64,000 nt of DNA, taken from contig OZ296650.1 in NCBI GenBank assembly GCA_965655095.1, positions 7,998,001 through 8,062,000 on the forward strand, written 5' to 3'. The stretch's first letter is position 1. Every line of letters starts with the position of its first letter. This document shows positions 1-64,000 of the stretch, piece by piece. A program made the translations under genes and the position numbers. The notes beneath the pieces were generated by a model. The model ran no database searches and was not told where the DNA came from. It saw only the letters and a list, made by a program, of their open reading frames with translations. Origin of the DNA: Haplodiscus bocki (Eukaryota).

Positions 1-1064
1 TAAGCTGAACTCGGCCAACACGGATCGACATTTGTTTGTAGTTAACTGATCATGCAAGTTTTACGTTTTTGCTGACGTCACTGTTAGAATAGAATTTTTC
101 TTGCTCTCAAGTTCCGCTTTAGACAACTTAACAATATTGAAGATCATGATTACAACCTAATATGTTTTCCAACACATCCCTGTAGACAGACACCAATTCA
201 ATCTGAGCGTAGGAAAAAGGATGAACTTTAACGTTCGTTTGAAGAGAGACCAAAGAACCACTGGCTTAGTTGAACTGAGGCATAATCTAACAAGTTTTGT
301 TAGTAGTAATCTGATCATCCAATTTTCACGACCTGCTGGACCTGTAAGGGAGATTGAAGAGATCTTCGTGCTCTCAAGGGGTTGCTTCTAAAGTTTGAAC
401 AACATTGAAGACCATGATTACATAAGAGGACGTTTTCGAGCAAATCGTCGTAGTCAGACACCAATTTAACAGGAGCGTAGGAAAAAAGAACCAATTTTGC
501 TGTTCGTTTCAAGAGACACTAAAAAAAACACTGGCTAAGTTGATCTCAGGCAACACCTATCGAACTGTGTAAGTAGTTGTCTGATCATGCAGGTTTTTTA
601 ACTTTTCTGACCTGGTGGGGAGAAAACAATCTTTCTTGCCCCCAAGAATCCACGTCAGACATCTGAAAAACGTCGAAGATCATGATTACATCATAGGTTG
701 TATTGAAACAATTCGCCGTAGCCAGACACTGTCTTAGTCTGGTCGTTTGACTAAAGAACGAACTGAAAACCTCGTAATAATTAAGGCCACAAAAGCAGTG
801 TCTTAGATGAATTCAGACAACAGAGATCGAGATTTGTATGCAGTCGTCCTATCATGCCAGTATTACAATTTTTTTGACCTGTTTGGGAGACTGAAGATGT
901 TCCTGCTCTCAAGAGTTCGTGTTAGACGTCTGAATAACATTGAAGATCTTGATTACACCGAAAGCTGTAATAAAACACTTCGTTTTAGTAAGACACTATG
1001 TTAGCTTGGTCGTTTGACTGAAGATCAGGTTGAAAAAAACGTAAGAAGCAAGACCGCAGAAGTA

Positions 1065-4000
1065 TTGGCTTAGTTCAACGCAGGTAACACCCTATCGAGT
1101 TTTGTCTGTAGTAATCTGATCTTTCAAGTTTCACAATTTTCTTTACCCATTCGGGAGATTTAAGATCTTCCTACACGCAAGAAGTCGCATCTGAAGTCTG
1201 AAAAACACTGAAAATCCTGATTACATCATCAGATGTGTTCAACTACTTTCGCTGTAGTAAAACACTAACATAGCTTAAGCGCAGGATTGTAGAACGAACG
1301 AAAAAGTAATTTATGAGCAAGACACAGAAGAATTGGCTCAGTTGAACTCAAACAACGAGCATCCAGCTTTGTTTTTAGTCATCTTATCATGCAAGTTTTA
1401 CGACTATCCTGACCTGTTGGGGAAATTTTAGATTTTCCTATTCTTAAGTGTTCGCGTTAGACATCTGAACAACATTGAAGACCATGATTACATCATAGGT
1501 TGTGTTGGAACAATTCGCCGTAGCCAAACACTGTCTTTGCCTGGTCGTTTGACTAAATAACGAACTGAAAACCTCGTAATTTTTAAGGCCACAAAAGCAG
1601 TGTCTTAGATGAATCCAGACATCAGAGATCGAAATTTGTATGCAGTCGTCCCATCATGCCAGTATTACAATTTTTTTGACCTGTTCGGGAGATTGAAGGT
1701 GTTCCTGTTCTCAGGAGTTCGTGTTAGACCTCTGCATAGCAATGAAGATCTTGATTACATCGAAAGCTGTAATAAAACACTTCGTTTCAGTAAGACACTT
1801 TATTAGCCTGGTCGTTTGACTAAAGAGGGGGTTGAAAAATTCGTAACAAGCCAGACCACAGAAACATTGGCTTAGTTGACCTCCAAAACCACCCTATCGA
1901 GTTTTGTCTGTAGTAACCTGATCTTGCAATTTTCACGATTTCCGTCAGCGATTCGGGAGATTTAAGATATTCTTGAACCCGAGGATTAAGTCTGAAGCCT
2001 GAAAACCACTGAAAATCCTGATTACATCATCAGTTATGTTCAAATACTTTCGCTGTAATAAAACTCTAACATGGCTTGAGCGTAGGACTGTAGAACGAAC
2101 GATAAAGTGCAATATAAGTAAGACACAGAAGAACGGGCTCAGTTGATTTCAAACAACAAGGATCGAGTTTTGTTTTTAGTTATCTGATCATGCAAGTTTT
2201 ACGACTAACCTGACATGGTGGGGAGATTTTAGATTTTCGTATTCTTAAGTGTTCGCGTCAGACATCTGAACAACACTGAAGATCATGATTACATCCTAAA
2301 ATGTATCCCAACACATCGTTGTAGTCATAAACCAACTTAACTTGAGCGTGTGAAGAGAGAGCGAGCTAAAATTCTCGGTTCAAGAGAGACCACTGACCCA
2401 CTGGTTTAGTTGAACGCTGGCAACAACTATCGAGTTTTGTCTCTAAGAAACTGATTTTGAAATTTTCACAAATTTCCTGACCTGGTCCGGAGATTGTTGA
2501 TCATTCTGCTCTCAAGGGTTCGTGATAGAACTCTGAACAACATTGAAGATCCTGTGTGTGTTCAAATACTCCGCTGCAGTAAGACACTAACTTAGCATAA
2601 GCATCTGATTGAAGATCGAACTACAAAATTCCTTATAACGAAAGCCACAGAGGCACTGACTAGGTTGAACTTAGCCAACATGGATCGAGCTTTGTTTGTA
2701 GTTAACTGATCATGCAAGTTTTACGTTTTTGCTGACGTCACTGTTAGAATAGAATTTTTCTTGCTCTCAAGTTCCGCTTTAGACAACTTAACAATATTGA
2801 AGATCATGATTACAACCTAATATGTTTTCCAACACATTGCTGTAGACAGACACCAACTCAATCTGAGCGTAGGAAGAAAGAATGAACTTTAACGTTCGTT
2901 TCAAGAAAGACCAAAGAAGCACAGACTTAGTTGAACTCAGGCAAAATCTATCATGTTTTGTTAGTAGTAATCTGATCATCCCAAGTTCACGACTTTCTGG
3001 ACCTTTTAGGTAGATTGAAGATCTTCGTGCTCTCAAGGGTTTTCGTCTAAAGTCTGAACAACATTGAAGATTATGATTACATAATAGGACGTTTTCCAGC
3101 AAATCGTCGTGATCAGACACCAATTTGAGATGAGCGTAGGAAGAAAGAGCGAATTTTACTGTTCGTTTCAAGAGACACTAGAGAAACACTGGCTAAGTTT
3201 AACTCAAACGACAAGGATTCAGCTTTGTTTGTAGTTATCTGATCATCCAAGTTTTACAACTATCCTAACCTGATAGAGGGATTTTAGAATTTCTTGCTCT
3301 CAAGTGTTCGCGTTAGACATCCGAACAGCATTGAAGATCACAATTACATCATAGGTTGTATTGAAACAATTCGCCGTAGACAGACACTGTCTTAGCGTCG
3401 TCGTATGTTTAAAGAACAAACTGAAAAGTTCGTAGGAAACAAGACCACAGAAGCAGTGTGTTAGATGAATTCAGACATCGCAGATCAAGTTTTGTATGCA
3501 GTCGGCCTGTCATGCCAGTTTTACGATTTTTTTTACCTTTTCGGGAGATTGAAGTTGTTCCTGCTCGCAAGATTTCGTGTTACATGTCTGAATAGCATTG
3601 AAGATGTTGATTACATCGAACTCTGTAATAAAACACTTCGTTTTAGTAAGACACTGTGTTAGCTTGGTCGTCTGACTAAAGAACGGGTTAAAAAATTCGT
3701 AATAAGCAAGAACACTGAAGCATTGGCTTAGTTCAACGCAGGTAACACCCTATCGAGTTTTGTCTGTAGTAATCTGATCTTTCAAGTTTCACAATTTTCT
3801 TTACCCATTCGGGAGATTTAAGATCTTCCTACACGCAAGAAGTCGCGTCTGAAGTCTGAAAAACACTGAAAATCCTGATTACATCATCAGATGTGTTCAA
3901 CTACTTTCGCTGTAGTAAAACACTAACATAGCTTAAGCGCAGGATTGTAGAACGAACGAAAAAGTAATTTATGAGCAAGACACAGAAGAATTGGCTCAGT

Positions 4001-6390
4001 TGAACTCAAACAACGAGCATCCAGCTTTGTTTTTAGTCATCTTATCATGCAAGTTTTACGACTATCCTGACCTGTTGGGGAAATTTTAGATTTTCCTATT
4101 CTTAAGTGTTCGCGTTAGACATCTGAACAACATTGAAGACCATGATTACATCATAGGTTGTGTTGGAACAATTCGCCGTAGCCAAACACTGTCTTAGCCT
4201 GGTCGTTTGACTAAATAACGAACTGAAAACCTCGTAAATTTTAAGGCCACAAAAGCAGTGTCTTAGATGAATCCAGACATCAGAGATCGAAATTTGTATG
4301 CAGTCGTCCCATCATGCCAGTATTACAGTTTTTTTGACCTGTTCGGGAGATTGAAGGTGTTCCTGTTCTCAGGAGTTCGTGTTAGACCTCTGCATAGCAA
4401 TGAAGATCTTGATTACATCGAAAGCTGTAATAAAACACTTCGTTTCAGTAAGACACTTTGTTAGCCTGGTCGTTTGACTAAAGAGGGGGTTGAAAAATTC
4501 GTAACAAGCCAGACCACAGAAACATTGGCTTAGTTGACCTCCAGTACCAACCTATCGAGTTTTGTCTGTAGTAACCTGATCTTGCAATTTTCACGATTTC
4601 CGTCAGCGATTCGGGAGATTTAAGATATTCTTGAACCCGAGGATTAAGTCTGAAGCCTGAAAACCACTGAAAATCCTGATTCCATCATCAGTTATGTTCA
4701 AATACTTTCGCTGTAATAAAACTCTAACATGGCTTGAGCGTAGGACTGTAGAACGAACGATAAAGTGCAATATAAGTAAGACACAGAAGAACGGGCTCAG
4801 TTGATTTCAAACAACAAGGATCGAGTTTTGTTTTTAGTTATCTGATCATGCAAGTTTTACGACTAACCTGACATGGTGGGGAGATTTTAGATTTTCGTAT
4901 TCTTAAGTGTTCGCGTCAGACATCTGAACAACACTGAAGATCATGATTACATCCTAAAATGTATCCCAACACATCGTTGTAGTCATACACCAACTTAACT
5001 TGAGCGTGTGAAGAGAGAGCGAGCTAAAATTCTCGGTTCAAGAGAGACCACTGACCCACTGGTTTAGTTGAACGCTGGCAACAACTATCGAGTTTTGTCT
5101 CTAAGAAACTGATTTTGCAATTTTCACAAATTTCCTGACCTGGTCCGGAGATTGTTGATCATTCTGCTCTCAAGGGTTCATGATAGAACTCTGAACAACA
5201 TTGAAGATCCTGTGTGTGTTCAAATACTCCGCTGCAGTAAGACACTAACTTAGCATAAGCATCTGATTGAAGATCGAACTACAAAATTCCTTATAACGAA
5301 AGCCACAGAGGCACTGACTAGGTTGAACTTAGCCAACATGGATCGAGCTTTGTTTGTAGTTAACTGATCATGCAAGTTTTACGTTTTTGCTGACGTCACT
5401 GTTAGAATAGAATTTTTCTTGCTCTCAAGTTCCGCTTTAGACAACTTAACAATATTGAAGATCATGATTACAACCTAATATGTTTTCCAACACATTGCTG
5501 TAGACAGACACCAACTCAATCTGAGCGTAGGAAGAAAGAATGAACTTTAACGTTCGTTTCAAGAAAGACCAAAGAAGCACAGACTTAGTTGAACTCAGGC
5601 AAAATCTATCAGGTTTTGTTAGTAGTAATCTGATCATCCCAAGTTCACGACTTTCTGGACCTTTTAGGTAGATTGAAGATCTTCGTGCTCTCAAGGGTTT
5701 TCGTCTAAAGTCTGAACAACATTGAAGATTATGATTACATAATAGGACGTTTTCCAGCAAATCGTCGTGATCAGACACCAATTTGAGATGAGCGTAGGAA
5801 GAAAGAGCGAATTTTACTGTTCGTTTCAAGAGACACTAGAGAAACACTGGCTAAGTTTAACTCAAACGACAAGGATTCAGCTTTGTTTGTAGTTATCTGA
5901 TCATCCAAGTTTTACAACTATCCTAACCTGATAGAGGGATTTTAGAATTTCTTGCTCTCAAGTGTTCGCGTTAGACATCCGAACAGCATTGAAGATCACA
6001 ATTACATCATAGGTTGTATTGAAACAATTCGCCGTAGACAGACACTGTCTTAGCGTCGTCGTATGTTTAAAGAACAAACTGAAAAGTTCGTAGGAAACAA
6101 GACCACAGAAGCAGTGTGTTAGATGAATTCAGACATCGCAGATCAAGTTTTGTATGCAGTCGGCCTGTCATGCCAGTTTTACGATTTTTTTTACCTTTTC
6201 GGGAGATTGAAGTTGTTCCTGCTCGCAAGATTTCGTGTTACATGTCTGAATAGCATTGAAGATGTTGATTACATCGAACTCTGTAATAAAACACTTCGTT
6301 TTAGTAAGACACTGTGTTAGCTTGGTCGTCTGACTAAAGAACGGGTTGAAAAATTCGTAATAAGCAAGAACACTGAAGCATTGGCTTAGT
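1065..6390. repeat. 10-monomer HOR, 2658 bp, two near-identical tandem copies
   Basis: ORF pairs are offset by exactly 2658 (1609/4267, 2788/5446, 3465/6123), and 2658 = 9x267 + one 255-bp monomer. Only scattered substitutions separate the copies. Confidence 0.95.
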
Positions 6391-7337
6391 TGAACTCAGG
6401 TAACACCTTATCGAGTTTTGTCTTTAGTATTCTGATCTTTCAAGTTTCACATTTTTCCTTACCCAATCGGGAGATTTAAGAACTTCCTACACCCAAGAGA
6501 TCAAGTCTGAAGTCTGAAAAACATTGAAAATCCTGATTACATCATCAGTTGTGTTCAAATACTTTCGCTGTATTAAAACACTAACATAGCTTAAGCGCAG
6601 GATTGTAGAACGAACGAAAAAGTAATTTATAAGCAAGACACAGAAGAATTGGCTCAGTTGAACTCAAACAACGAGCATCCAGCTTTGTTTTTAGTTATCT
6701 TATCATGCAAGTTTTACGACTAACCTGAAATGGTCGGGAGATTTTAGATTTTCTTGCTCTCAAGTGTTCGCGTTAGACATCTGAACAACCTTGGAGATCA
6801 TGGTTACTTCATAAGATGTTTCCCAACACATCGATGTAGTCATACACCAACTTCACTTGAGCGTATGAGGAAAGAGCGAAATTAAATTCTCGATTCAAGA
6901 GAGGCCACTGAACCACTGGCTTAGTTGAACGCTGGCAACAACTATCGAGTTTTGTCTCTTAGAATCTGATTTTGCAATTTTCACGAATTTCGTGACATGG
7001 TCCGTAGATTGTTGATCTTTCTGCTCTCTGGGGTTCGTGTTAGAACCCTGAACAACATCGAAGATCCTGTGTGTGGTCAAATGCTTCGCTGCAGTAAGAC
7101 ACTAACTTAGTTTAAGCATCTGATTGAAGATCGAACTACAAAATTCCTTTTAACGAAGGCCACAGAAGCACTGACTAAGTTGAACTCAGCCAACACGGAT
7201 CGAGTTTTGTTTATAGTTAATTGATCATGCGAGTTTTAAGTCTTTGCTGACCTGGCTGGCAGAATAGAGTTTTTCTTGCTCTCAAGTTCCGCTTTAGGCA
7301 ACTGAACCCGATCGAAGATCATGATTACATCCTAAGA

Positions 7338-8580
7338 TGTTTTCCAACACATCCCTGTAGACAGACACCAATTCAATCTGAGCGTAGGAAAAAGGATGAA
7401 CTTTAACGTTCGTTTGAAGAGAGACCAAAGAACCACTGGCTTAGTTGAACTGAGGCATAATCTAACAAGTTTTGTTAGTAGTAATCTGATCATCCAATTT
7501 TCACGACCTGCTGGACCTGTAAGGGAGATTGAAGAGATCTTCGTGCTCTCAAGGGGTTGCTTCTAAAGTTTGAACAACATTGAAGACCATGATTACATAA
7601 GAGGACGTTTTCGAGCAAATCGTCGTAGTCAGACACCAATTTAACAGGAGCGTAGGAAAAAAGAACCAATTTTGCTGTTCGTTTCAAGAGACACTAAAAA
7701 AAACACTGGCTAAGTTGATCTCAGGCAACACCTATCGAACTGTGTAAGTAGTTGTCTGATCATGCAGGTTTTTTAACTTTTCTGACCTGGTGGGGAGAAA
7801 ACAATCTTTCTTGCCCCCAAGAATCCACGTCAGACATCTGAAAAACGTCGAAGATCATGATTACATCATAGGTTGTATTGAAACAATTCGCCGTAGCCAG
7901 ACACTGTCTTAGTCTGGTCGTTTGACTAAAGAACGAACTGAAAACCTCGTAATAATTAAGGCCACAAAAGCAGTGTCTTAGATGAATTCAGACAACAGAG
8001 ATCGAGATTTGTATGCAGTCGTCCTATCATGCCAGTATTACAATTTTTTTGACCTGTTTGGGAGACTGAAGATGTTCCTGCTCTCAAGAGTTCGTGTTAG
8101 ACGTCTGAATAACATTGAAGATCTTGATTACACCGAAAGCTGTAATAAAACACTTCGTTTTAGTAAGACACTATGTTAGCTTGGTCGTTTGACTGAATAT
8201 CAGGTTGAAAAAAACGTAAGAAGCAAGACCGCAGAAGCATTGGCTTAGTTCAACGCAGGTAACACCCTATCGAGTTTTGTCTGTAGTAATCTGATCTTTC
8301 AAGTTTCACAATTTTCTTTACCCATTCGGGAGATTTAAGATCTTCCTACACGCAAGAAGTCGCGTCTGAAGTCTGAAAAACACTGAAAATCCTGATTACA
8401 TCATCAGATGTGTTCAACTACTTTCGCTGTAGTAAAACACTAACGTAGCTTAAGCGCAGGACTGTAGAACGAACGAAAAAGTAATTTATGAGCAAGACAC
8501 AGAAGAATTGGCTCAGTTGAACTCAAACAACGAGCATCCAGCTTTGTTTTTAGTTATCTTATCATGCAAGTTTTACGACT
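7338..8580. repeat. Near-identical copy of ~163-1405 (about 4.6 monomers), offset 7175 bp (27 monomers)
   Basis: Identical translated ORFs at 315/7490 and 807/7982. Rare variants are shared, such as TGATCTCAGG, CACTAAAAAAAACAC and GAAGAGATC. Confidence 0.9.
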
Positions 8581-11500
8581 AACCTGACATGGTCGGGATT
8601 TTTTAGCTTTTCTAATTCTTAAGTGTTCGCGTTAGACATCTGAACAACACTAAAGATCATGGTTACATCCTGAAATGTATCCCAACACATCGCTGTAGTC
8701 ATACACTAACATAACTTGAGCGTGTGAAGAGAGAGCGAACAAAAATTCTAGATTCAAGAGAGACCACTGACCCACTGGTTTATTTGAACACTGGCAACAA
8801 CTATCGAGTTTTGTCTCTAAGAATCTGATTCTGCAATTTTCACAAATTTCCTGACCTGGTCCGGAGATTGTTGATCTTTCTGCTTTCAAGGGTTGGTGAT
8901 AGAACTCTGAACAACATTGAAGATCCTGTGTGTGTTCAAACACTCCGCTGCAGTAAGACACTAACTTAGCATAAGCATCTGAGTGAAGATCGAACTACAA
9001 AATTCATTATAACGAAGGCCACAGAAGCACTGACTAGGTTGAACTTAGCCAACACGGATCGAGCTTTGTTTGTCGTTAAATGATTATGCAAGTTTTACGT
9101 TTTTGCTGACGTGACTGGCGGAATAGAACTTTTCTTGCTCTCAAGCCCCCTTAGACGACTTAACATTATTGAAGATCATGACTACATCCTAAGATGTTTT
9201 CCAACACATTGCTGTAGACAGACACCAATTCAATCTGAGCGTAGGAAAAAAGAATGAAATTTAACGTTCGTTTCAAGAGAGACCAAAGAAGCACTGGCTT
9301 AGTTGAACTCAGGCAAAATCTATCAGGTTTTGTTAGTAGTAATCTGATCATCCAAAGTTCACAAATTTCTTGACCTTTTAGGTTGATTGAAGATCTTCGT
9401 GCTTTCAAGGGTTTGCGCCTAAAGTCTGAACAACATTGAAGATTATGATTACATAATAGAACGTTTTCCAGCAAATCGTCGTGATCAGACACCAATTTAA
9501 GATGAGCGTAGGAAGAAAGAACGAATTCTACTGTTCGTTTCAAGAGACACAAGAGAAGCACTGGCTAAGTTTAACTCAAACGACAAGGATTCGGCTTTGT
9601 TTGTAGTTATCTGATCATGCAAGTTTTACAACTATCCTGACCTGGTAGGGAAATTTTAAATTTTCTTGCTCTCAAGTGTTCGCGTTAGACATCTGAACAG
9701 CATTGAAGATCACGTTTAAATCATAAGTTGTACTGAAACAATTCACCGTAGCGAGACACTGTCTTAGCCTGGTCGTATAACTAAAGAACAAACTGAAAAC
9801 TTCGTAGTAAACAAGACCACAGAAGCAGTGTCTTAGTTGAATTCAGACATCGCAGATCAAGTTTTGTATGCAGTCGGCCTGTCATGCCAGTTTTACGATT
9901 TTTTTGACCTTTTCGGGAGATTGAAGATGTTCCTGCTCGCAAGATTTCGTGTTACATGTCTGAATAGCATTGAAGATCTTGATTACATCGAAAGCTGTAA
10001 TAGAACACTTCGTTTTAGTAAGACACTATGTTAGCTTGGTCGTCTGACTAAAGAACGGGTTGAAAAATTCGTAACAAGCAAGAACACTGAAGCATTGGCT
10101 TAGTTGAACTCAGGTAACACCTTATCGAGTTTGCCTTTAGTATTCTGATCTTTCAATTTTTACAATTTTCCTTACCCATTCGGGATATTTAAGAAATTCC
10201 TACATCAAAGACATTGTATCTGAATTCTGAAAAACATAGAAGGTCCTGATAACAACGTCAGATGTGTTCAAATACCTTCGCTGTAGTAGAACACTAACAT
10301 AGCTTAAGCGCAGGATTGTAGAACGAACGAAAAAATAAGTTATGAGCAAGACACAGAAGAATTGGATCAGTTGAACTCAAACAACAAGAGTCGAGCCTTA
10401 TTTGTAGTTAACTGATCATGCAAGTTTTACGTTTTTGCTGAAGTGACTGGCAGAATAGAGTTTTTCTTGCTCTCAAGCTCCGCTTTAGACAACTGAACAT
10501 TATTGAAGATCAGGGTTACATCCTAAGATGTTTTCCAACACATCCCTGTAGACAGACACCAGTTCCATCTGAGCGTAGGAAAAAAGAATGAAATTTAACG
10601 TTCGTTTCAAGAGATACCAAAGAAGCACTGGCTTAGTTGAACGCAGGCAAAATCTAACAAGTTTTGTTAGTAGTAATCTGATCATCCAATTTTCACGACC
10701 TGCTGGACCTGTAAGGGAGATTGAAGAGATCTTCGTGCTCTCAAGGGGTTGCTTCTAAAGTTTGAACAACATTGAAGACCATGATTACATAAAAGGACGT
10801 TTTCCAGCAAATCGTCGCAGTCGGACACCAATTTAACATGAGCGTAGGAAGAAAGAACGAATTTTACTGTTCGTTTCAAGAGACAATAAGAAAGCACTGG
10901 CTAATTTGAACTCAAGCAACACCTATCGAACTGTGTTTGCAGTAATCTGATCATGCAGGCTTTTTTACGGTCCTGACCTTGTGGGGAGGAAATAAATTTT
11001 CTTGCCCCCAAGAATCCACGTCAGACATCTGAAAAACGTTGAAGATCATGATTCCATCATTGGTTCTATTGAAACAATTCGCCATTGCCAAACACTGTCT
11101 TAGCCTGGTCGTTTGACTAAAGAACGAATTGAAAACCTCGTAATAATTAAGGCCACAAAAGCAGTGTCTTCAATGAATTCAGACATCAGAGATCGAGATT
11201 TGTATGCAGTCGTCCCATCATGCCAGTATTACAATTTTTTTGACCTGTTCGGGAGATTGAAGATGTTCCTGCTCTCAAGAGTTCGTGTTAGACGTCTGCA
11301 TCCATAGCAATGAAGATTTTGATTACATCGAAAGCTGTAATAAAACACTTCGTTTCAGTAAGACACTTTGTTAGCCTGGTCGTTTAACTAAAGAAGGGGT
11401 TGAAAAATGCGTAACAAGCAAGACCACAGAAGCATTGGCTTAGTTGAACTCAAGTACCACCCTATCGAGTTTTGTCTGCAGTAATCTGATCTTGCAATTT

Positions 11501-17500: not shown

Positions 17501-17704
17501 CGAAATACGTTATGAGCAAGACACAGAAGAACTGGCTCAGTTGAACTCAAACAACAAGGATCGAGCTTTGTGTGTAGTTATCTGATCATGCAAATTTTAC
17601 GACTAACCTGAACTGTTGGGGAGATTTTAGAGTTTCGCATTCTTAAGTGTTCGCGTTAGACATCTGAACAACATGGAAGACCATGATCACATCATAGGTT
17701 GTGT

Positions 17705-18785
17705 TGAAACAATTCGCCGTAGCCAAACACTGTCTTAGCCTGGTCGTTTGACTAAAGAACGAACTGAAAACCTCGTAATATATAAGGCCACAAAGGCAGT
17801 GTCTTAGATGCATTCAGACAACAGAGATCGAGATTTGTATGCAGTCGTCCTATCATGCCAGTATTACAATTTTTTTGACCTGTTCGGGAGACTGAAGATG
17901 TTCCTGCTCTCAAGAGTTCGTGTTAGACGTCTGAATAGCATTGAAGATCTTGATTACACCGAAAGCTGTAATAAAACACTTCGTTTTAGTAAGACACTAT
18001 GTTAGCTTGGTCGTTTGGCTGAAGATCAGGTTGAAAAAATCGTAACAAGCAAGACCGCAGAAGCATTGGCTTAGTTCAACGCAGGTAACACCCTATCGGG
18101 TTCTGTCTGTAGTAATATGATCTTGCAAGTTTCACGATTTTCCTTACCGGTTCGGGATATTTAAGAACTTCCTACATCCAAGAGATTGTATCTGATGTCT
18201 GAAAAACATAGAAGATCCTGATAACAACATCAGATGTGTTCAAATACCTTCGCTGCAGTAAGACACTAACTTAGTTTGAGCATCTGATTGAAGATCGAAC
18301 TAAAAAATTCGTTTTAACGAAGGCCACAGAAGCACTGACTAAATTGAACTCAGCCAACACGGATCGAGCTTGGTTTGTTGTTAACTGATCATGCAAGTTT
18401 TACGTTTTTGTTGACGTGACTGGCAGAATAGAGTTTTTCTTGCTGTCAAGTTCCGCTTTAGACGACTTAACATTATTGAAGATCATGACTACATCCTAAG
18501 ATGTTTTCCAACACATTGCTGTAGACAGACACCAATTCAATCTGAGCGTAGGAAAAAAGAATGAAATTTAATGTTCGTTTCAAGAGAGACCAAAGAAGCA
18601 CTGGCTTAGTTGAACCCAGACAAAATCTAACAAGTTTTGTTAGTAGTAATCTGATCATACAAATTTCACGACCTGCTGGACCTGTTAGGTAGATTGAAGA
18701 GATCTTCGTGCTCTCAAGGGGTTGCGTCTAAAGTATGAACAACATTGAAGACCATGATTACATAACAGGACGTTTTCCAGCAAAT
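17705..18785. repeat. Close copy of ~13982-15062 (4 monomers), offset 3723 bp (14 monomers)
   Basis: ORF pairs 14085/17808 and 14750/18473 are both offset by 3723. Both blocks carry the variant TATCGGGTTCTGTCTGTAGTAATATG. Confidence 0.85.
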
Positions 18786-54500: not shown

Positions 54501-55907
54501 TAATAATTAGGACCACAAAAGCAGTGTCTTAGATGAATTCAGAAACCACAGATCAAGTTTTGTATGCAGTCGTCCAATCATGCCAGTATTGCGATATTTT
54601 CACCAGTTTACTAGGTTGAAGGTCTTCCTGCTCTGAAGCGTTCATGTTAGAAGTCTGGACCACATTGTAGATCCTGATTACATCAAAAGAAGTTTTCAAA
54701 CACTTCGTTTTAGTAAGACACCATCTTAGCCTATTTGTTTGACTATAGAAGGAACTTAAGTGTTCGTAATTAAAATTAACAACGAAGCAGCGTCTTAGTT
54801 GAACTCAGAGTTCATGCATCGGGTGTTGTGTGCAATCGTCCTATCATGTTTGTTTATGACTTTCTTGATATGCTCGGGAAATTGAAGATCTTCCTGCTCT
54901 CAAAAGTTCTTGTTAACGGTTGAATAACATTTGAGATCCCAATTACATCATCAGATGTGTTCAAATACTTCGCTGTAGAATTATTTTAACATATCTTAAG
55001 GTATGATTGTAGAACGAACTATAAAATACGTTATAACCAAGACACCGATAAACTGGCACAATTGAACTCAAACAACAAGGATCGAGTTCTGTTTGTGGTT
55101 ATCTGATAATGCATGCTTTAGAATTTCAAGACTTGGTTGGGAAAATGTAGATCTTCTTGTTCTCAGGGGTTCGTGTTTGAAGCTTGAACAACTTTGAAGA
55201 TAGAAATTACATCAAAAGATGTGTTGAAAAAGTTCGCCGTAGTCAAACACTCCCTTAGCCTGGTCGTTTCACCGAAGAACGAAGGGAAAAGTTCGCAAAA
55301 AGCAAGAACATTGAAGCACTGTCTTAATTGGAAACACAAAAATCTCAGCCAGTCGTGTTTGTAGTTTTGTGAATATGAAAGTTCCAGAAAAGTCTTGACC
55401 CGGTCGAAAGAATGTAGGTATTCGGACTCTATAGAGTTCATGTCAGACGCCTGAATGACCTTGAATATCAAAAATACATAATAAGATGTGTTCAAACACT
55501 TCCCTGTAGTTAGATACTAACTTAGTTTTAGCGTATCATTGAAGAAGGAAGTATATTGTTCGTTGAAAGAAAAACCATTGAAGCAATGTATTTCTCAGTT
55601 GAACTCAAACATCAGGGATCAAGTTTTAAATGCAGTCATCCTAATACGCAAGTTGTACGATTTTCTTGACCTGGTTTTGAGTTTAAAAATTTTCTTGCTT
55701 TCAAAAGTTTGCGATAGACATCTGAACAACAATGAGGATCTTGATTTTATCATAGGATGTTTTCCAACACATCGCGGTAGTCAGACACCAACTTAGTTTG
55801 ACCTTTTGAAAAAAGGAACGCTTCTCTTTGTATCAAGAGAGACCACTGAATCACTGGCTTAGTTGAACACTGGCAACACCTATCGACTTCTGTGACTAGT
55901 AATCTGA
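50569..55907. repeat. 10-monomer tandem duplication, 2663-2664 bp
   Basis: ORF offsets are 51185/53849 (2664), and 52500/55163 and 52876/55539 (2663). The hybrid junction is at CTAGTAATCTGA, 53233. Confidence 0.92.
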
Positions 55908-58900
55908 TGCAATTTTCACGGATTTTCGGAAGTGGTCCTGAGAATGTTGATCTTCCTGCTATGAACGGTTCGTGTTAGAAGTCTGAAACACTTTGAAGAT
56001 AATGATTACATCAAAAGATGTATTCAAACACTTCGCTGTAGTCAGACATTATCTTAGCCTGTTCGCTTGATTAAAGGAGGAACTTGAGTATTCGTAAGAA
56101 AAAACAAGATAAAGGAAGCAGTGTCTTAGTTGAACTCAGATTTCAAAGAGCGAGCTTTAAGTGCAGTGGTCCAATCACGCAGTCTTCATGTCTTTTTTTA
56201 ACTGTTCGGAGCATTGAAGATATTCCTGCTCTCAAGTCGTCGTGTTTGAAGTCTGAACAACATCAAAGATCATGATTACATCAAAAGTTGTATTCAATAA
56301 TGTGGCCGTAGACAGACACTACCATAGCTGGTCGTTTGACTAAAGAACGAGTTCAAAACTTCGAAACAGGCAAAGCCACTGAAGCACTGTCTTAGTTGAA
56401 CCCAGACAACACCTATCGAGTTTCGTCTGTAGTAATCTGTTCAAGTTTGTTTCAGCACTTTCCTGACCCATTGGCGAGAAAGTGGATCTTCCTGCTCTAA
56501 AGGGTTCGTGTTAGAAGTCTGAACAACACTGAAGATCTTGATTACATCATAAGCTGTTTTCCAACACATCGCCGTAGTCAGACACTGATTTAAACTGAAC
56601 GTAGGAAGAAAGAACGATTTTTACTGTTCGTTTCAAGAGAGACCAAAGAAGAACTGGTTTAATTGAACTCACGCAACCCCTATCGAACTTTATTTGTGGT
56701 AATCTGATCATGCCTTCTTTTTTTAACTTTCCTGACCCAGTTGGGAAAAAATAGATTTTCTTGCTCTCAAGTGTCAACGTTACACATCTGAATAACTTTG
56801 AGGATCATGGTAACATCATAAGATGTTTTCCAACACAACGCTGTAGTCATACACCAACCTATGTTGACCATTTGACAAAATTAGGAACTTACGTTTCAAT
56901 TCAAGAGAGACCACTGAACCACTGGCTTATTTGAACACTGGCAAAACCTATTGAATTTTGTCTCTAGTAATCTAGCGAACGTTGCTCTTCCAGCCCTGAA
57001 AGATTCGTGTTAGAAGTCTGAACCACTTTGAAGATCCTCATTACATCAAAAGACGTATTCAAACACTTCGCTGTAGTCAGACACTATCTTAGCCTGTTCG
57101 TTTGATTAAAGAAGGAACTTAAGTCTTCCTAATGAACAAAACCAGTGAAGCATTGTCTTAGTTGAACTCAGATATCACAGATCAAGCTTTAAATGCTGTA
57201 GTCCAATCGTTTAAGTTGTACAGTTTCCCTAAACTGGTCGGGAGATGAAAGATCTTCCTGCTCCCATGAACTCGTGTAAGACCTCTGAAGATTATTGAAG
57301 ATCCTGATCACATCATCAGATGTGTTCAAATACTTCGCCCTAGCTGGAAGTTAACTAAATTTAAGCGTATGATTGAAGAACGAATTAAAAACTCCGTAAT
57401 AAACAAGACCACTGAAGCAGTCTCTTGGTTGAACTGAGACATCACAGATCAAGTTTTGTTTGTGATTATCTGAACATGCAAGTTTTACGACTATCTTGAC
57501 CCGGTGGGGAGTTTTTAGATTTTCTTGCCCTCAAGAGTCCGCGTCAGACATCTGAAAAACATTGAAAATCATGGTTACATCACAAGTTGTATTGAAACAC
57601 TTCGCCGAAGCCAGACACTGTCTGAGCATTGTCGTTTGACTAAAGAACGAACTAAAAACTTCGTAATAATTAGGACCACAAAAGCAGTGTCTTAGATGAA
57701 TTCAGAAAAAAACAGATCAAGCTTTGTATGCTGTAGTCCTATCACGCCAGTACTGCGATTTTTTTCACCTGTCTATTATATTGAATGTCTTCCAGCTCTG
57801 AAGCGTTCGTGTTAGAATTCTGAACAACATTGAAGATCCTGATGACACCAAAAGTTGTTTTTAAACACTTCGTTTTAGTAAGACACCATCTTAGCCTGTT
57901 TGTTTGACTAAAGAAGGAATTAAGTGTTCGTAATGAAAAATAACAACGAAGCAGCGTCTTGGTTGAACTCAGACTTCATGCATCGGGTGTTGTGTGCAAT
58001 CGTCCTATCGTGCTTGTTTATGACTTTCTTGATACGCTCGGGAAATTGAAGATCTTCCTGCTCTCAAAAGTTCTTGTTAACGGTTGAATAACATTTGAAA
58101 TCCCAATTACATCATCAGATGTGTTCAAATACTTCGCTGTAGATTTACTTTAACATATCTTAAGGTATGATTGTAGAACGAACTAGAAAATACGTTTTAA
58201 GCAAGACACCGATGAACTGGCTCAATTGAACTCAATCAACAAGGATCGAGTTCTGTTTGTGGTTATCTGATAATGCATGCTTTAGAATTTCAAGACTTGT
58301 TTGGGAAAATGTAGATCTTCTTGTTCTCAGGGGTTCGTGTTTGAAGCTTGAACAACTTTGAAGATAGAAATTAGATCAAAAGATGTGTTGAAAAACTTCG
58401 CCGTAGTCAGACACTCCCTTAGCCTGGTCGTTTCACCGAAGAACGAAAGGAAAAGTTCGCAAAAAGCAAGAACATTGAAGCACTGTCTTAATTGGAAACA
58501 AAAAAATCTCAGCCAGTCGTGTTTGTAGTTTTGTGAATATGAAAGTTCCAGAAAAGTCTTGACCCGGTCGAAAGAATGTAGGTATTCGGACTCTATAGAG
58601 TTCATGTCAGACGCCTGAATGACCTTGAATATCAAAAATACATAATAAGATGTGTTCAAACACTTCCCTGTAGTTAGATACTAACTTAGTTTTAGCGTAT
58701 CATTGAAGAAGGAAGTATATTGTTCGTTGAAAGAAAAACCATTGAAGCAATGTATTTCTCAGTTGAACTCAAACATCAGGGATCAAGTTTTAAATGCAGT
58801 CATCCTAATACGCAAGTTGTACGATTTTCTTGACCTGGTTTTGAGTTTAAAAATTTTCTTGCTTTCAAAAGTTTGCGATAGACATCTGAACAACAATGAG

Positions 58901-61900
58901 GATCTTGATTTTATCATAGGATGTTTTCCAACACATCGCGGTAGTCAGACACCAACTTAGTTTGACCTTTTGAAAAAAGGAACGCTTCTCTTTGTATCAA
59001 GAGAGACCACTGAATCACTGGCTTAGTTGAACACTGGCAACACCTATCGACTTCTGTGACTAGTAATCTGATGCAATTTTCACGGATTTTCGGAAGTGGT
59101 CCTGAGAATGTTGATCTTCCTGCTATGAACGGTTCGTGTTAGAAGTCTGAAACACTTTGAAGATAATGATTACATCTAAAGTTGTATTCAATAATATGGC
59201 CGTAGTCAGACACTATCATAGCTGGTCGTTTGACTCAAAAACGAATTCAAAACTTCGAAAGAGGCAAAGCCACTGAAGCACTGTCTTAGTTGAACCCAGA
59301 CAAAACCTATCGAGTTTCGTCTGTAGTAATCTGTTCATGTTTGTTTCAGCACTTTCCTGACCCAGTGGCGAGAAAGTAGATCTTTCTGCTCTAAAGGGTT
59401 CGTGTTAGAAGTCTGAACAACACTGAAGATCTTGATTACATCATAAGGTGTTTTCCAACACATCGCCGTAGTCAGACACTGATTTAAACTGAACGTAGGA
59501 AGAAAGAACGATTTTTACTGTTCGTTTCAAGAAAGACCAAAGAAAAACTGGTTTAATTGAACTCACGCAACCCCTATCGAACTTTAATTGTGGTAATCTG
59601 ATCATGCCTTTTTTTTAACTTTCCTGACCCGGTTGGGAAAAAGAAAGATTTTCCTGCTCTCAAGTGTCAACGTTACACATCTGAAAAACTTTGAGGATCA
59701 TGATAACATCATAAGATGTTTTCCAACATATCGCTGTAGTCATACACCAACCTATGTTGACCATTTGACAAAATTAGGAACTTAGGTTTCAATTCAAGTG
59801 AGACCACTGAACCACTGTCTTATTTGAACACTGGCAAAACCTATCGAATTTTGTCTCTAGTAATCTGACTATGCAATTTTCGCGAATTTCATGACCTGGT
59901 CCAGCGAACGTTGCTCTTCCTGCTCTGACGGGTTCGTGTTAGAAGTCTGAACCACTTTGAAGATCCTGATTACATCAAAAGACGTATTCAATTACTTCGC
60001 TGTAGTCACACACTATCTTAGCCTGTTCGTTTGATTAAAGGAGGAAATTAAGTCTTCCTAGTGAACAAAACCAGTAAAGCATTGTCTTAGTTGAACTCAG
60101 ATATCACAGATCAAGCTTTAAATGCTGTAGTCCAATCGTGCAAGTTGTACAGTTTCCCTAAACTGGTCAGGAACTGAAAGATCTTCCTGCTCCCATGAAC
60201 TCGTGTAAGACCTCTGAAGAACATTGAAGATCCTGATCACATCATCAGATGTGTTCAAAAACTTCGCCCTAGCTGGAAGTTAACTAAATTTATGCGTATG
60301 ATTGAAGAACGAATTAAAAACTTCGTAATAAACAAGACCACTGAAGCAGTCTCTTGGTTGAACTGAGACATCACAGATCAAGTTTTGTTTGTGATTATCT
60401 GAACATGCAAGTTTTACGACTATCTTGACCCGGTGGGGAGTTTTTAGATTTTCTTGCCCTCAAGAGTCCGCGTCAGACATCTGAAAAACATTGAAAATCA
60501 TGGTTACATCACAAGTTGTATTGAAACACTTCGCCGAAGCCAGACACTGTCTGAGCATTGTCGTTTGACTAAAGAACGAACTAAAAACTTCGTAATAATT
60601 AGGACCACAAAAGCAGTGTCTTAGATGAATTCAGAAAAAAACAGATCAAGCTTTGTATGCTGTAGTCCTATCACGCCAGTACTGCGATTTTTTTCACCTG
60701 TCTATTATATTGAATGTCTTCCAGCTCTGAAGCGTTCGTGTTAGAATTCTGAACAACATTGAAGATCCTGATGACACCAAAAGTTGTTTTTAAACACTTC
60801 GTTTTAGTAAGACACCATCTTAGCCTGTTTGTTTGACTAAAGAAGGAATTAAGTGTTCGTAATGAAAAATAACAACGAAGCAGCGTCTTGGTTGAACTCA
60901 GACTTCATGCATCGGGTGTTGTGTGCAATCGTCCTATCGTGCTTGTTTATGACTTTCTTGATACGCTCGGGAAATTGAAGATCTTCCTGCTCTCAAAAGT
61001 TCTTGTTAACGGTTGAATAACATTTGAAATCCCAATTACATCATCAGATGTGTTCAAATACTTCGCTGTAGATTTACTTTAACATATCTTAAGGTATGAT
61101 TGTAGAACGAACTATAAAATACGTTTTAAGCAAGACACCGATAAACTGGCTCAATTGAACTCAATCAACAAGGATCGAGTTCTGTTTGTGGTTATCTGAT
61201 AATGCATGCTTTAGAATTTCAAGACTTGTTTGGGAAAATGTAGATCTTCTTGTTCTCAGGGGTTCGTGTTTGAAGCTTGAACAACTTTGAAGATAGAAAT
61301 TGCATCAAAAGATGTGTTGAAAAACTTCGCCGTAGTCAGACACTCCCTTAGCCTGGTCGTTTCACCGAAGAACGAAGGGAAAAGTTCGCAAAAAGCAAGA
61401 ACATTGAAGCACTGTCTTAATTGGAAACAAAAAAATCTCAGCCAGTCGTGTTTGTAGTTTTGTGAATATGAAAGTTCCAGAAAAGTCTTGACCCGGTCGA
61501 AAGAATGTAGGTATTCGGACTCTATAGAGTTCATGTCAGACGCCTGAATGACCTTGAATATCAAAAATACATAATAAGATGTGTTCAAACACTTCCCTGT
61601 AGTTAGATACTAACTTAGTTTTAGCGTATCATTGAAGGAGGAAGTATATTGTTCGTTGAAAGAAAAACCATTGAAGCAATGTATTTCTCAGTTGAACTCA
61701 AACATCAGTGATCGAGTTTTAAATGCAGTCATCCTAATACGCAAAATGTACGATTTTCTTGACCTGGTTGGGAGTTTAAAAATTTTCTTGCTTTTAAAAG
61801 TTTGCGATAGACATCTGAACAATATTGAGGATCATGATTTTATCATAGGATGTTTTCCAACACATCGCGGTAGTCAGACACAAACTTAGTTTGACCTTTT

Positions 61901-64000
61901 GAAAAAAAGAACGCTACTCTTTGTATCAAGAGAGACCACTGAATCACTGGCTTAGTTGAACACTGGCAATACCTATCGAATTCTGTGACTAGTAATCTGA
62001 TGCAATTTTCACGGAGATTCCGAAGTGGTCCTGACAATGTTGATCTTCCTGCTCTGAACGGTTCGTGTTAGAAGTCTGAAACACTTTGAAGATAATGAAT
62101 ACATCAAAAGATGTATTCAAACACTTCGATGTAGTCAGACATTATCTTAACCTGTTCGCTTGATTAAAGAAGGAACTTGAGTATTCGTAAAAAAACAAGA
62201 TAATGGAAGCAGTGTCTTAGTTGAACTCAGATTTCAAAGAGCGAGCCTTAAGTGCAGTGGTCCAATCACGCAGTCTTCATGTCTTTTTTTACCTGTTCGG
62301 AGCATTGAAGATCTTCCCGCTCTCATATCGTCGTGTTTGAAGTCTGAACAACATCGAAGATCATGATTACATCAAAAGTTGTATTCAATAATATGGCCGT
62401 AGACAGACACTATCATAGCTGGTCGTTTGACTAAAGAACGAGTTCAAAACTTCGAAACAGCCAAAGCCACTGAAGCACTGTCCTAGTTGAACCCAGACAA
62501 CACCTATCGAGTTTCGTCTGTAGTAATCTGTTCATGTTTGTTTCAGCACTTTCCTGACCCAGTGGCGAGAAAGTAGATCTTTCTGCTCTAAAGGGTTCGT
62601 GTTAGAAGTCTGAACAACACTGAAGATCTTGATTACATCATAAGGTGTTTTCCAACACATCGCCGTAGTCAGACACTGATTTAAACTGAACGTAGGAAGA
62701 AAGAACGATTTTTACTGTTCGTTTCAAGAAAGACCAAAGAAAAACTGGTTTAATTGAACTCACGCAACCCCTATCGAACTTTAATTGTGGTAATCTGATC
62801 ATGCCTTTTTTTTAACTTTCCTGACCCGGTTGGGAAAAAGAAAGATTTTCCTGCTCTCAAGTGTCAACGTTACACATCTGAAAAACTTTGAGGATCATGA
62901 TAACATCATAAGATGTTTTCCAACATATCGCTGTAGTCATACACCAACCTATGTTGACCATTTGACAAAATTAGGAACTTAGGTTTCAATTCAAGTGAGA
63001 CTACTGAACCACTGTCTTATTTGAACACTGGCAAAACCTATCGAATTTTGTCTCTAGTAATCTGACTATGCAATTTTCGCGAATTTCATGACCTGGTCCA
63101 GCGAACGTTGCTCTTCCTGCTCTGACGGGTTCGTGTTAGAAGTCTGAACCACTTTGAAGATCCTGATTACATCAAAAGACGTATTCAATTACTTCGCTGT
63201 AGTCACACACTATCTTAGCCTGTTCGTTTGACTAAAGGAGGAAATTAAGTCTTCCTAGTGAACAAAACCAGTGAAGCAATGTCTTAGTTGAACTCAGATA
63301 TCACAGATCAAGCTTTAAATGCTGTAGTCCAATCGTGCAAGTTGTACAGTTTCCCTAAACTGGTCGGGAACTGAAAGATCTTCCTGCTCCCATGAACTCG
63401 TGTTAAGACCTCTGAAGAACATTGAAGATCCTGATCACATCATCAGATGTGTTCTAATACTTCGCTGTAGTGAAACACTAACTTAGTTTAAGCGTATGAT
63501 TGACGAACGAATTATAAACTTCGTAATAAGCAAGACCACTGAAGCAGTCTCTTGGTTGAACTGAGACATCACAGATCAAGTTTTGTTTGTGATTATCTGA
63601 TCATGCAAGTTTTACGACTATCTTGACCCGGTGGGGAGACTTTAGATTTTCTTGCCCTCAAGAGTCCGCGTCAGACATCTGAAAAACATTGAAAATCATG
63701 GTTACATCACAAGTTGTATTGAAACACTTCGCCGAAGCCAGACACTGTCTGAGCATTGTCGTTTGACTAAAGAACGAACTAAAAACTTCGTAATAAATAG
63801 GACCACAAAAGCAGTGTCTTAGATGAATTCAGAAACTACAGATCAAGCTTTGTATGCTATCGTCCTATCATGCCAGTACTGCGATTTTTTCACCTGTTTA
63901 TTATATTGAATGTCTTCCAGCTGTGAAACGTTCGTGTTAGAATTCTGAACCACATTGAAGATCCTGATGACACCAAAAGCTGTCTTTAAACACTTCGCTT
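54528..64000. repeat. 11/12-monomer HOR domain (unit lengths ~3164, 2929, ~3198 bp)
   Basis: ORF offsets are 55163/58327 (3164) and 58327/61256 (2929). D-type monomers start at ~54528, 57691, 60620 and 63818, with order D-M-N-O-P-Q-R-S-I-J-K-L/C. Confidence 0.88.

What the first reader, a model, noticed from the sequence alone, without database searches (positions are those of the whole stretch)
1..64000. Multi-tier HOR satellite resembling alpha-satellite organisation, built on an unfamiliar 267-bp monomer
Seen: neighbouring monomers are strongly diverged, while copies n monomers apart are nearly identical, with n = 7, 10, 11, 12 or 18 in different parts of the window. Known: this is the defining HOR pattern of primate alpha satellite and some plant and animal centromeres. 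Inference: this is a candidate (peri)centromeric domain of a satellite family that I do not recognise and that may be undescribed.
Basis: partly seen in the sequence, partly recalled or inferred. Interest (0 to 1): 0.72.

Follow-up and report, generated by a model that had tools for sequence, protein, structure and literature searches.

The report
Single-locus satellite grown from a repeat
The window is real non-coding satellite DNA with higher-order repeats, but it is one 143-kb array at a single site that grew from a short repeat inside an old copy of a chromosome-end repeat, and nothing in the sequence points to a centromere.

Summary
Observation confirmed. The window holds 242 head-to-tail 267-bp monomers on one strand, with no interruption, gene or known RNA. 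Neighbours are about 66% identical. Blocks 7, 10, 11, 12, 14, 18 and more monomers apart are 93-99.5% identical, far beyond chance.

The window is 45% of one array, C3:7,988,245-8,131,318 (about 143 kb, 536 monomers), on a 135-Mb contig. An array-type 22-mer has 71 matches in the 1.5-Gb genome: 69 in this array, 2 elsewhere on C3.

About 40 other sites carry only 2-4 full monomers inside a young, non-coding composite repeat (copies 98-100% alike), mostly within 100 kb of contig ends. The array's left flank is colinear with the sequence upstream of those short arrays (76.6% over 1,750 bp) and starts with the same truncated monomer. The young monomers lie near the array's consensus (91%).

So the satellite is an in-place expansion of an internal repeat in an old copy of that element. 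It diverged for a long time, then had blocks re-copied locally.

The centromere reading is not supported: one chromosome, 6% from its end, no CENP-B box. CENH3 binding is untested.

The scan has already found other higher-order and transposon-born satellites on other DNA of this genome. This is a new member of a known kind.

The parts
1..64000 (+). Uninterrupted head-to-tail array of 242 monomers of about 267 bp. It is the central 45% of a 143-kb array at C3:7,988,245-8,131,318.
1..22870 (+). Higher-order domain 1. The basic unit is a 10-monomer string (types ABCDEFDGHI), repeated about 13 times with deletion variants.
   Evidence: (type string)
1085..6667 (+). Youngest 10-monomer repeat of domain 1: period 2,658 bp, copies 99.0% identical. 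A further copy of 280-1351 lies 7,175 bp on, at 99.5%.
22871..64000 (+). Higher-order domain 2. The basic unit is a 14-monomer string (UVWXYZabcQRSde), with or without 4 more monomers (IATN), giving 18. It is repeated about 11 times with deletions and internal duplications.
24454..34123 (+). Repeats of 18 and 10 monomers (periods 4,768 and 2,595 bp), 96.6-97.1% identical.
39630..49214 (+). Three copies of a 12-monomer repeat (period 3,195 bp), 96.6-98.0% identical.
47352..51079 (+). 7-monomer repeat (period 1,863 bp), 98.6% identical.
50546..55872 (+). 10-monomer repeat (period 2,664 bp), 98.8% identical.
56406..61965 (+). 11-monomer repeat (period 2,894-2,929 bp), 97.5% identical.
385..464 (+). 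Example (second monomer) of the box of about 65-80 bp at monomer positions 106-185. The box is also present in two 117-bp repeats and in neighbouring 324-bp-repeat modules of the young composite element. It contains the slowest-changing 20-bp stretch of the monomer.

Best explanation
The window is part of a single-locus satellite that grew in place from the short internal tandem repeat of a dispersed, non-coding composite repeat.

Proposed history:
1. An old copy of that composite repeat sat at C3:7.985 Mb. Its internal 268-bp repeat, which is 2-4 full copies in today's young copies, was amplified early into an array.
2. The monomers then drifted apart without array-wide homogenisation. Each is now about 25% from the element-borne monomer, the same as the unique flank.
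3. Much later, blocks of 7-18 monomers were re-copied locally, most likely by unequal exchange or replication slippage between out-of-register repeats. This produced two families of higher-order repeats at 93-99.5% identity and most of today's 143 kb.

Shown: the array structure, the single location, the shared left junction and flank, and the near-consensus position of the element monomer.

Inferred: the order of events, the duplication mechanism, and that the array is neutral heterochromatin-type DNA, not a centromere.
For: Extent and single locus:
- Probes and motif hits place the array at C3:7,988,245-8,131,318, all on the + strand, with no gap over 60 bp in the 108 kb that I read.
- The array-type 22-mer AATCTGATCATGCAAGTTTTAC, at up to 2 mismatches, has 71 hits in 1.5 Gb. 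69 are in the array, 2 lie at C3:0.81 and 1.39 Mb, and the control gives 0.

Shared junction:
- L056:1502-3218 (C3 left flank running into the array) is colinear with L060:1501-3231 (a young copy) at 76.6% over 1,750 bp.
- Both arrays open with the same truncated monomer, profile positions 205-267 and 203-267.
- The flank homology reaches about 2.9 kb upstream.

Ancestry:
- Young element monomers are 98.5-100% alike and 91% identical to the array consensus.
- Array monomers are 75% (68-80%) identical to the element monomer and 68% to each other, a star-like pattern.
- Element monomers score 258-266 bits against the array profile, while array pieces average 157-171 bits.

Direction of origin:
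- Monomer positions 106-185 are a box also found in two 117-bp repeats and in 324-bp-repeat modules of the same composite (80-90% identity). The monomer is therefore built from element sequence.

Local re-copying:
- Identity falls with distance. Pieces at 8.10-8.13 Mb have their own repeats and are only about 0.755 identical to window monomers.
- Left-edge monomers match nothing above about 0.70.

Neutral decay:
- No covariation in candidate hairpins.
- Transition/transversion ratio about 1 and CpG observed/expected 0.83.

Precedent:
- Expansion of short arrays inside transposable elements into satellite DNA is a described route (PMC10048060; PMC7492417; PMC3879986).
Against: - The right end does not show the element's downstream part. 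The array stops inside a monomer (position 67) next to sequence with no other match in the genome. Only one of the two junctions supports the model.
- I did not show that the composite repeat is mobile. No target-site duplication or empty site was examined, no coding capacity was found, and no inverted match longer than 8 bp links its candidate ends. It could instead spread by exchange between chromosome ends.
- Long-range order rests on the assembly alone.
Confidence: 0.8

Rival explanations
1. The array is the functional centromere, or pericentromere, of chromosome C3.
For: - Higher-order repeat organisation and lack of genes resemble many centromeric satellites.
- No transposon insertion in 108 kb read.
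- No paper describing cnidarian centromere DNA was found, so no alternative is established.
Against: - Only C3 has a long array; no other contig carries the array-type monomers.
- It lies 8 Mb (6%) from the end of a 135-Mb contig.
- Its young relatives are chromosome-end repeats.
- 143 kb is small for a 135-Mb chromosome (my own judgement, not a tool result).
- No CENP-B box.
- Each higher-order variant has only 2-4 copies and there is no homogenised core.
- Earlier scan notes (unverified) report a satellite family of about 177 bp on several pieces, including mid-C3.
- In one karyotyped stony coral all 14 chromosome pairs are metacentric or submetacentric (PMC9005458). The species here is unknown, so this is only context.
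Confidence: 0.07
2. The direction is reversed: a pre-existing long satellite on C3 was the source, and the dispersed element picked up the array edge (flank plus a few monomers) and spread it.
For: - The shared junction alone is symmetric with respect to direction.
- Capture of satellite repeats by transposable elements has been proposed in the literature (PMC10048060).
Against: - The monomer contains a box that also occurs, outside any 268-bp repeat, in sister modules of the composite.
- The element monomer lies close to the centre of the monomer radiation.
- A second old copy at C3:9.165 Mb has the same upstream flank next to its own array.
Confidence: 0.1
3. The array is a chain of independent insertions of small diverged elements, each landing at the joint of the previous one. 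This follows the earlier scan notes on Helitron-like chains and would replace in-place duplication and drift.
For: - The composite repeat is modular. The module carrying the 268-bp repeat ends at one fixed point and is followed by different modules in different copies.
Against: - No source copies exist. Nothing elsewhere in the genome is closer than 75-77% to window monomers.
- Monomer types recur in fixed order as blocks, as expected from block duplication.
Confidence: 0.02
4. The pattern is an assembly artefact: mis-joined or collapsed reads of a simpler array.
For: - Only contig-level data from one study were available, and none spans a higher-order unit.
Against: - Monomer variants are present in contigs of two samples.
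- The register is perfect across 64 kb, with dozens of distinct monomer types in consistent order.
Confidence: 0.02

Closest known systems
Primate alpha satellite higher-order repeats
   Same: - Head-to-tail monomers with strongly diverged neighbours.
- Near-identical copies n monomers apart, and structural variants of the repeat unit.
- Older, unhomogenised monomers at an edge.
   Different: - 267-bp monomer against 171 bp (my own knowledge).
- No CENP-B box.
- Each variant has only 2-4 copies, with no long homogenised core.
- One locus on one chromosome.
- No evidence of kinetochore function.
Satellite-like central repeats of non-autonomous Helentrons/Helitrons (Cg_HINE in oyster, PMC7492417; DINE-TR1 in Drosophila and others, as reviewed in PMC10048060)
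   Same: - The same monomer occurs as a short array of variable copy number inside a dispersed non-coding element and as a long stand-alone array.
   Different: - Helentron hallmarks were not found. No inverted match over 8 bp links the candidate ends, and only a weak 5-bp hairpin lies before a CTAG near the 3' end.
- The carrier is a multi-module chain holding several unrelated tandem repeats.
- Mobility was not shown.
Non-autonomous Helitrons carrying ordered arrays of several satellites at chromosome ends in Paramecium (PMC13085455)
   Same: - The young composite repeat holds several different tandem repeats in a fixed order (periods 188, 268, 117, 324, 351, 31 and 9 bp).
- It lies mostly within 100 kb of contig ends.
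   Different: - Here the host is an animal.
- No Helitron protein or terminal signature was verified.
- Interstitial copies also exist, on C2 and C3.
Tandem-repeat-containing MITEs of bivalves (DTC84, PMC3879986)
   Same: - A short internal array of satellite-type monomers within a dispersed non-coding element.
   Different: - The carrier here is many kilobases long and modular.
- No terminal inverted repeats were seen.

Membership tests
Satellite DNA with higher-order repeat organisation | Long uninterrupted head-to-tail array of non-coding monomers | tested here: met
   242 monomers on one strand with no gap over 30 bp; no ORF over 131 aa, no tRNA, no Rfam family.
Satellite DNA with higher-order repeat organisation | Neighbouring monomers diverged, while copies a fixed number of monomers apart are near-identical, beyond chance | tested here: met
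   Identity at lag 1 is 0.663. Blocks at lags 7-31 are 93-99.5% identical. Longest same-lag run is 15 monomers, against at most 3 in 100 order shuffles.
Centromeric satellite | Occupied by CENH3/CENP-A nucleosomes | not testable with these tools
   No chromatin data. No RNA or ChIP run was found among the holders of this sequence.
   The array-type motif has 69 of 71 genome hits in this one array and none outside C3. Other chromosomes carry only 2-4 full monomers inside a chromosome-end repeat.
Centromeric satellite | Position coincides with the primary constriction | not testable with these tools
   The array lies 8 Mb from the end of a 135.2-Mb contig. The species' karyotype is unknown.
Alpha satellite (primate) | Monomer of about 171 bp, CENP-B box in a subset of monomers | tested here: not met
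   The monomer is 267 bp. The pattern TTCGNNNNANNCGGG has 0 matches.
Satellite born from the internal tandem repeat of a dispersed element | The same monomer family occurs as short arrays inside a dispersed repeat | tested here: met
   About 40 copies carry 2-4 full monomers plus two partial ones, mostly 98-100% alike (a few older copies 93-97%).
Satellite born from the internal tandem repeat of a dispersed element | The long array sits in the element's frame: same flank and same junction | tested here: inconclusive
   Left side met: 76.6% colinear over 1,750 bp with the same truncated first monomer. Right side not met: the array ends inside a monomer next to unique sequence.
Helentron/Helitron non-autonomous element (HINE) | Subterminal inverted repeats of 11-12 bp, 3' palindrome, microsatellite in the left flank (PMC7492417) | tested here: inconclusive
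   No inverted match over 8 bp between candidate starts and the module end. Only a 5-bp hairpin lies 15 nt before a CTAG near the end. The 5' boundary of the module is uncertain.

The most novel reading that the evidence does not exclude
The array, born from a chromosome-end repeat, has been taken over as the centromere of chromosome C3, or the roughly 70-bp box kept in each monomer is a protein-binding site present in about 500 copies. Either way it would be a directly datable case of a mobile-element repeat turning into functional chromosomal DNA in a cnidarian, a group for which I found no description of centromere DNA.
Probability: 0.07. Interest if true: 0.6.

Novelty: new member of a known kind. 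Interest (0 to 1): 0.3.

Why it matters
It gives a clean, datable example of how a satellite with higher-order repeats is born. The seeding element, the birth junction, the old diverged monomers and the young re-copied blocks are all visible in one assembly. The flank divergence serves as an internal clock for the monomer radiation.

It also shows that higher-order repeat structure alone is not evidence for a centromere in this genome. The same scan has found several such arrays here.

Practically, the 267-bp probe should make a good single-locus cytogenetic marker for one chromosome end region.

Tried and rejected
- Coding repeat (267 = 3 x 89): rejected. No ORF exceeds 131 aa and stops occur in all frames.
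- RNA genes: none. Rfam gathering search gave 0 and tRNA search gave 0.
- 'Ancient dimer' of two halves (another note on this window): the best self-alignment of the consensus scores 16, against 16.1 +/- 2.3 for shuffles.
- Conserved hairpins or dyads in the monomer: four candidate helices pair no more often than when the 3' columns are shuffled. Examples are 0.843 vs 0.844 and 0.654 vs 0.655.
- Methylation-type CpG decay: none. Retention at CpG is 0.68-0.71, against 0.68 at other G, and CpG observed/expected is 0.83.
- CENP-B box: 0 matches.
- Helentron-type subterminal inverted repeats: none over 8 bp.
- Proteins near the array: a 193-aa open stretch in the right flank and a 152-aa one in L034 have no Pfam match.
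- Metagenome scan for the conserved 22-mer, hoping for host-derived contigs that would name the host: 0 hits.
- RNA evidence: no RNA run holds the sequence.
- A fuzzy-regex search for the module end timed out and was replaced by blastn-short.
Full report
**1. What is in the window**

TRF reports a 267-bp period across the window, with only 64-66% matches between successive copies. A profile HMM built from 20 monomers finds 242 hits. All are on the + strand, and no gap exceeds 30 bp from base 1 to 63,999. Of 241 spacings, 183 are 265-268 bp. GC content is flat at 0.37-0.40. No 24-mer has its reverse complement in the window.

Nothing looks coding or like a known RNA. The longest ORF is 131 aa, and there is no tRNA and no Rfam family.

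**2. Higher-order structure**

Mean identity between neighbours is 0.663, and the median over all monomer pairs is 0.667. Even so, 74% of monomers have another copy at 95% or more.

Clustering at 85% gives about 35 monomer types. Their order shows two domains.
- Domain 1 (window 1-22,870) is built on a 10-monomer string, repeated about 13 times with deletion variants.
- Domain 2 (22,871-64,000) is built on a 14-monomer string, with or without 4 extra monomers (giving 18). It is repeated about 11 times, with derivatives of 7, 10, 11 and 12 monomers.

Block copies are 93-99.5% identical, and the coordinates are listed under parts.

Shuffling the order of monomers gives same-lag runs of at most 3, against 15 observed. 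It gives a mean of 0.09 runs of 3 or more, against 39 observed.

**3. Extent and uniqueness**

The window is G000:C3:7,998,001-8,062,000, on a 135.2-Mb contig of a 1.5-Gb genome. Earlier scan notes call the organism an animal, reportedly a coral. I could not verify that.

Probes and flanking pieces place the array between C3:7,988,245 and 8,131,318. That is 143,074 bp, or about 536 monomers, all on the + strand. There is no gap over 60 bp in the 108 kb that I read.

A 22-mer typical of the array monomers (AATCTGATCATGCAAGTTTTAC, up to 2 mismatches) has 71 matches in the genome. Of these, 69 lie between C3:7,989,609 and 8,131,301, including the stretches I could not fetch. The other two lie at C3:0.81 and 1.39 Mb. 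The reversed control gives 0.

A second motif, shared with all relatives (AACATTGAAGATCATGATTACA), has 155 exact and 475 near matches. They fall into three groups:
- this array;
- a second array on the opposite strand at C3:9,154,120-9,164,883, at least 11 kb long with a periodicity of about 9 monomers;
- roughly 40 short arrays.

**4. The short arrays and their carrier**

The short arrays have 2-4 full monomers of 268 bp plus a partial monomer at each end. They sit in a repeat whose copies are mostly 98-100% identical over 900 bp at more than 30 loci, with a few older copies at 93-97%.

On chromosome-scale contigs, most copies lie within about 100 kb of a contig end:
- C4 at 14 kb;
- C5 at 25 and 60 kb, and at 17 and about 100 kb from the far end;
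- C6 at 42 kb;
- C8 at 22 kb from the end;
- C11 at 93 kb from the end.

Interstitial copies lie on C2 (33.9 and 103.0 Mb) and C3 (2.59 and 2.62 Mb). Many small unplaced contigs also carry copies.

The carrier is non-coding. No open stretch reaches 130 aa in the 10-kb pieces that flank the short arrays, except a 152-aa stretch in L034 that has no Pfam match.

The carrier is modular. It contains tandem repeats with periods of 188, 268, 117, 324, 351, 31 and 9 bp in a fixed order, and a short (TTAGGG)n run lies nearby. The module carrying the 268-bp repeat ends at one fixed nucleotide, and different modules follow it in different copies.

Earlier notes interpret such chains in this genome as Helitron-like. 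I saw the modular joints but could not verify Helitron or Helentron hallmarks.

**5. Origin of the array**

- Shared flank. The 1 kb left of the C3 array matches the sequence upstream of the short arrays at about 40 loci, at 75-77% and in the same orientation.
- Shared junction. The alignment is colinear from the flank into the array: L056:1502-3218 against L060:1501-3231, 76.6% over 1,750 bp. Both arrays open with the same truncated monomer, at profile positions 205-267 and 203-267. The homology extends about 2.9 kb upstream and begins at a module boundary that is also seen in the young copies.
- Near-consensus element monomer. Element-borne monomers are 91% identical to the array consensus. 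Array monomers are 75% (68-80%) identical to the element monomer and 68% to each other. Element monomers also score far better against the array profile (258-266 bits) than the array pieces do on average (157-171 bits). This is a star-like radiation from a sequence close to the element's monomer.
- Timing. Monomer divergence from the element (25%) matches flank divergence (23%). The first amplification therefore happened early in the life of this old copy, with no array-wide homogenisation since.
- Direction. Monomer positions 106-185 are a box that also occurs, at 80-90% identity, in two 117-bp repeats after the short array and in the neighbouring 324-bp-repeat modules. The monomer is made of element sequence, which favours 'element repeat expanded' over 'element captured a satellite'.
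- Weak point. The right end does not fit. The array stops inside a monomer (position 67) next to sequence found nowhere else in the genome.

**6. Later history**

Identity falls with distance along the array.
- Left-edge monomers match nothing above about 0.70.
- The window has its own blocks.
- The pieces at 8.10-8.13 Mb have their own 10-monomer repeats and are only about 0.755 identical to window monomers.

The higher-order repeats therefore come from local block duplication, most simply by unequal exchange (inference).

Rough dating (inference, with assumed rates):
- With a Jukes-Cantor correction, the flank distance is about 0.28, while block copies differ by 0.5-7%. The re-copying is therefore roughly 10-50 times younger than the monomer radiation.
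- Under an assumed 1-5 x 10^-9 substitutions per site per year, this means tens of millions of years for the radiation and about 0.5-20 million years for the blocks.

**7. Signs of function**

None are convincing.
- Candidate hairpins show no covariation.
- Substitutions look neutral, with a transition/transversion ratio of about 1 and no CpG decay.
- There is no CENP-B box.
- No RNA run holds the sequence.

The only hint is that the slowest-changing 20-bp window (retention 0.878, against a null 95th percentile of 0.868, P = 0.008) lies in the shared box. The lineages are not independent, so this is weak.

**8. Centromere question**

- The family is on one chromosome only, 6% from its end.
- The array is small compared with the chromosome (my own judgement).
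- It derives from a repeat that otherwise lives at chromosome ends.
- Each higher-order variant has only 2-4 copies.

CENH3 binding remains untested, so I keep about 7% for a centromere role.

I found no paper describing centromere DNA in a cnidarian. In one karyotyped stony coral all chromosomes are metacentric or submetacentric (PMC9005458), which is context only.

**9. Comparison with what is known**

The layout works like alpha satellite, but it fails membership of that family on monomer length and on the CENP-B box. The birth route matches what is described for tandem repeats carried inside Helitron/Helentron-type and MITE-type elements (PMC10048060, PMC7492417, PMC3879986). The multi-satellite, chromosome-end carrier recalls the Helitron-borne satellite arrays at Paramecium chromosome ends (PMC13085455). 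Membership of the carrier in those transposon families is not shown.

The scan has already reported several higher-order satellites and transposon-born satellites on other DNA of this genome. This one is another member of that kind.

**10. Limits**

- No comparison with Dfam, Repbase or nt was possible.
- The species is unknown to me.
- The second array and the far right flank could not be read.
- Long-range order rests on the assembly, since public runs gave only short contigs.

Noticed in passing
G000:C3:9,154,120-9,164,883 (outside the window; not fetched): A second array of the same family, at least 11 kb long, lies on the opposite strand 1.1 Mb away. Motif hits recur about every 2,417 bp (9 monomers). 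The same upstream flank lies at C3:9,165,313-9,166,331, 75% identical to the main array's flank. This suggests a second expansion from another old copy.
   Followed up: partly
L027, L028, L031, L033, L048 (C11, C8, C4, C2, C304): A young (98-100% identical), non-coding composite repeat holds several unrelated tandem repeats in fixed order (periods 188, 268, 117, 324, 351, 31 and 9 bp). It lies mostly within 100 kb of contig ends on at least six chromosome-scale contigs. Modules are swapped between copies at fixed joints.
   Followed up: partly
L027:1465-1551 (C11:91,722,465-91,722,551): An interstitial run of 14.5 perfect GGGTTA units (the TTAGGG telomere motif) lies inside the composite repeat, about 100 kb from the contig end.
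   Followed up: no
L048:2155-2362; L027:5665-5760 and 7408-7500; window monomer positions 106-185: A box of about 65-80 bp is shared at 80-90% identity by the 268-bp monomer, two 117-bp repeats and the 324-bp-repeat modules. It contains the slowest-changing stretch of the array monomers (P = 0.008). It could be a binding or processing site of the carrier element.
   Followed up: partly
L048:2433-2468: The module carrying the 268-bp repeat ends with a 5-bp hairpin (CTGCT-CAA-AGCAG), then 15 nt, then CTAG and AGA. This loosely resembles a Helitron 3' end. No matching 5' signature or subterminal inverted repeat was found.
   Followed up: partly
L056:2746-3996 and L008 (C3:7,988,245-7,991,000): The left-most monomers of the array match no other monomer above about 0.70. 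They form an old, never re-copied edge, so the array has an age gradient on this side.
   Followed up: partly
window 41761-42011 (note s1-356436): The idea that the 267-bp monomer is an ancient dimer is not supported. The best self-alignment of the consensus scores no better than shuffled sequence.
   Followed up: yes
L050:3173-3751 (C3:8,132,922-8,133,500): A 193-aa open stretch runs off the end of the fetched right flank, 1.6 kb beyond the array. It has no Pfam match.
   Followed up: partly
L033:5411-7800; L034:4737-8300: A 1,191-bp unit starting TAGAAGGTAGTAACG is repeated 2-3 times in tandem upstream of the 268-bp module. Its copy number differs between loci.
   Followed up: no
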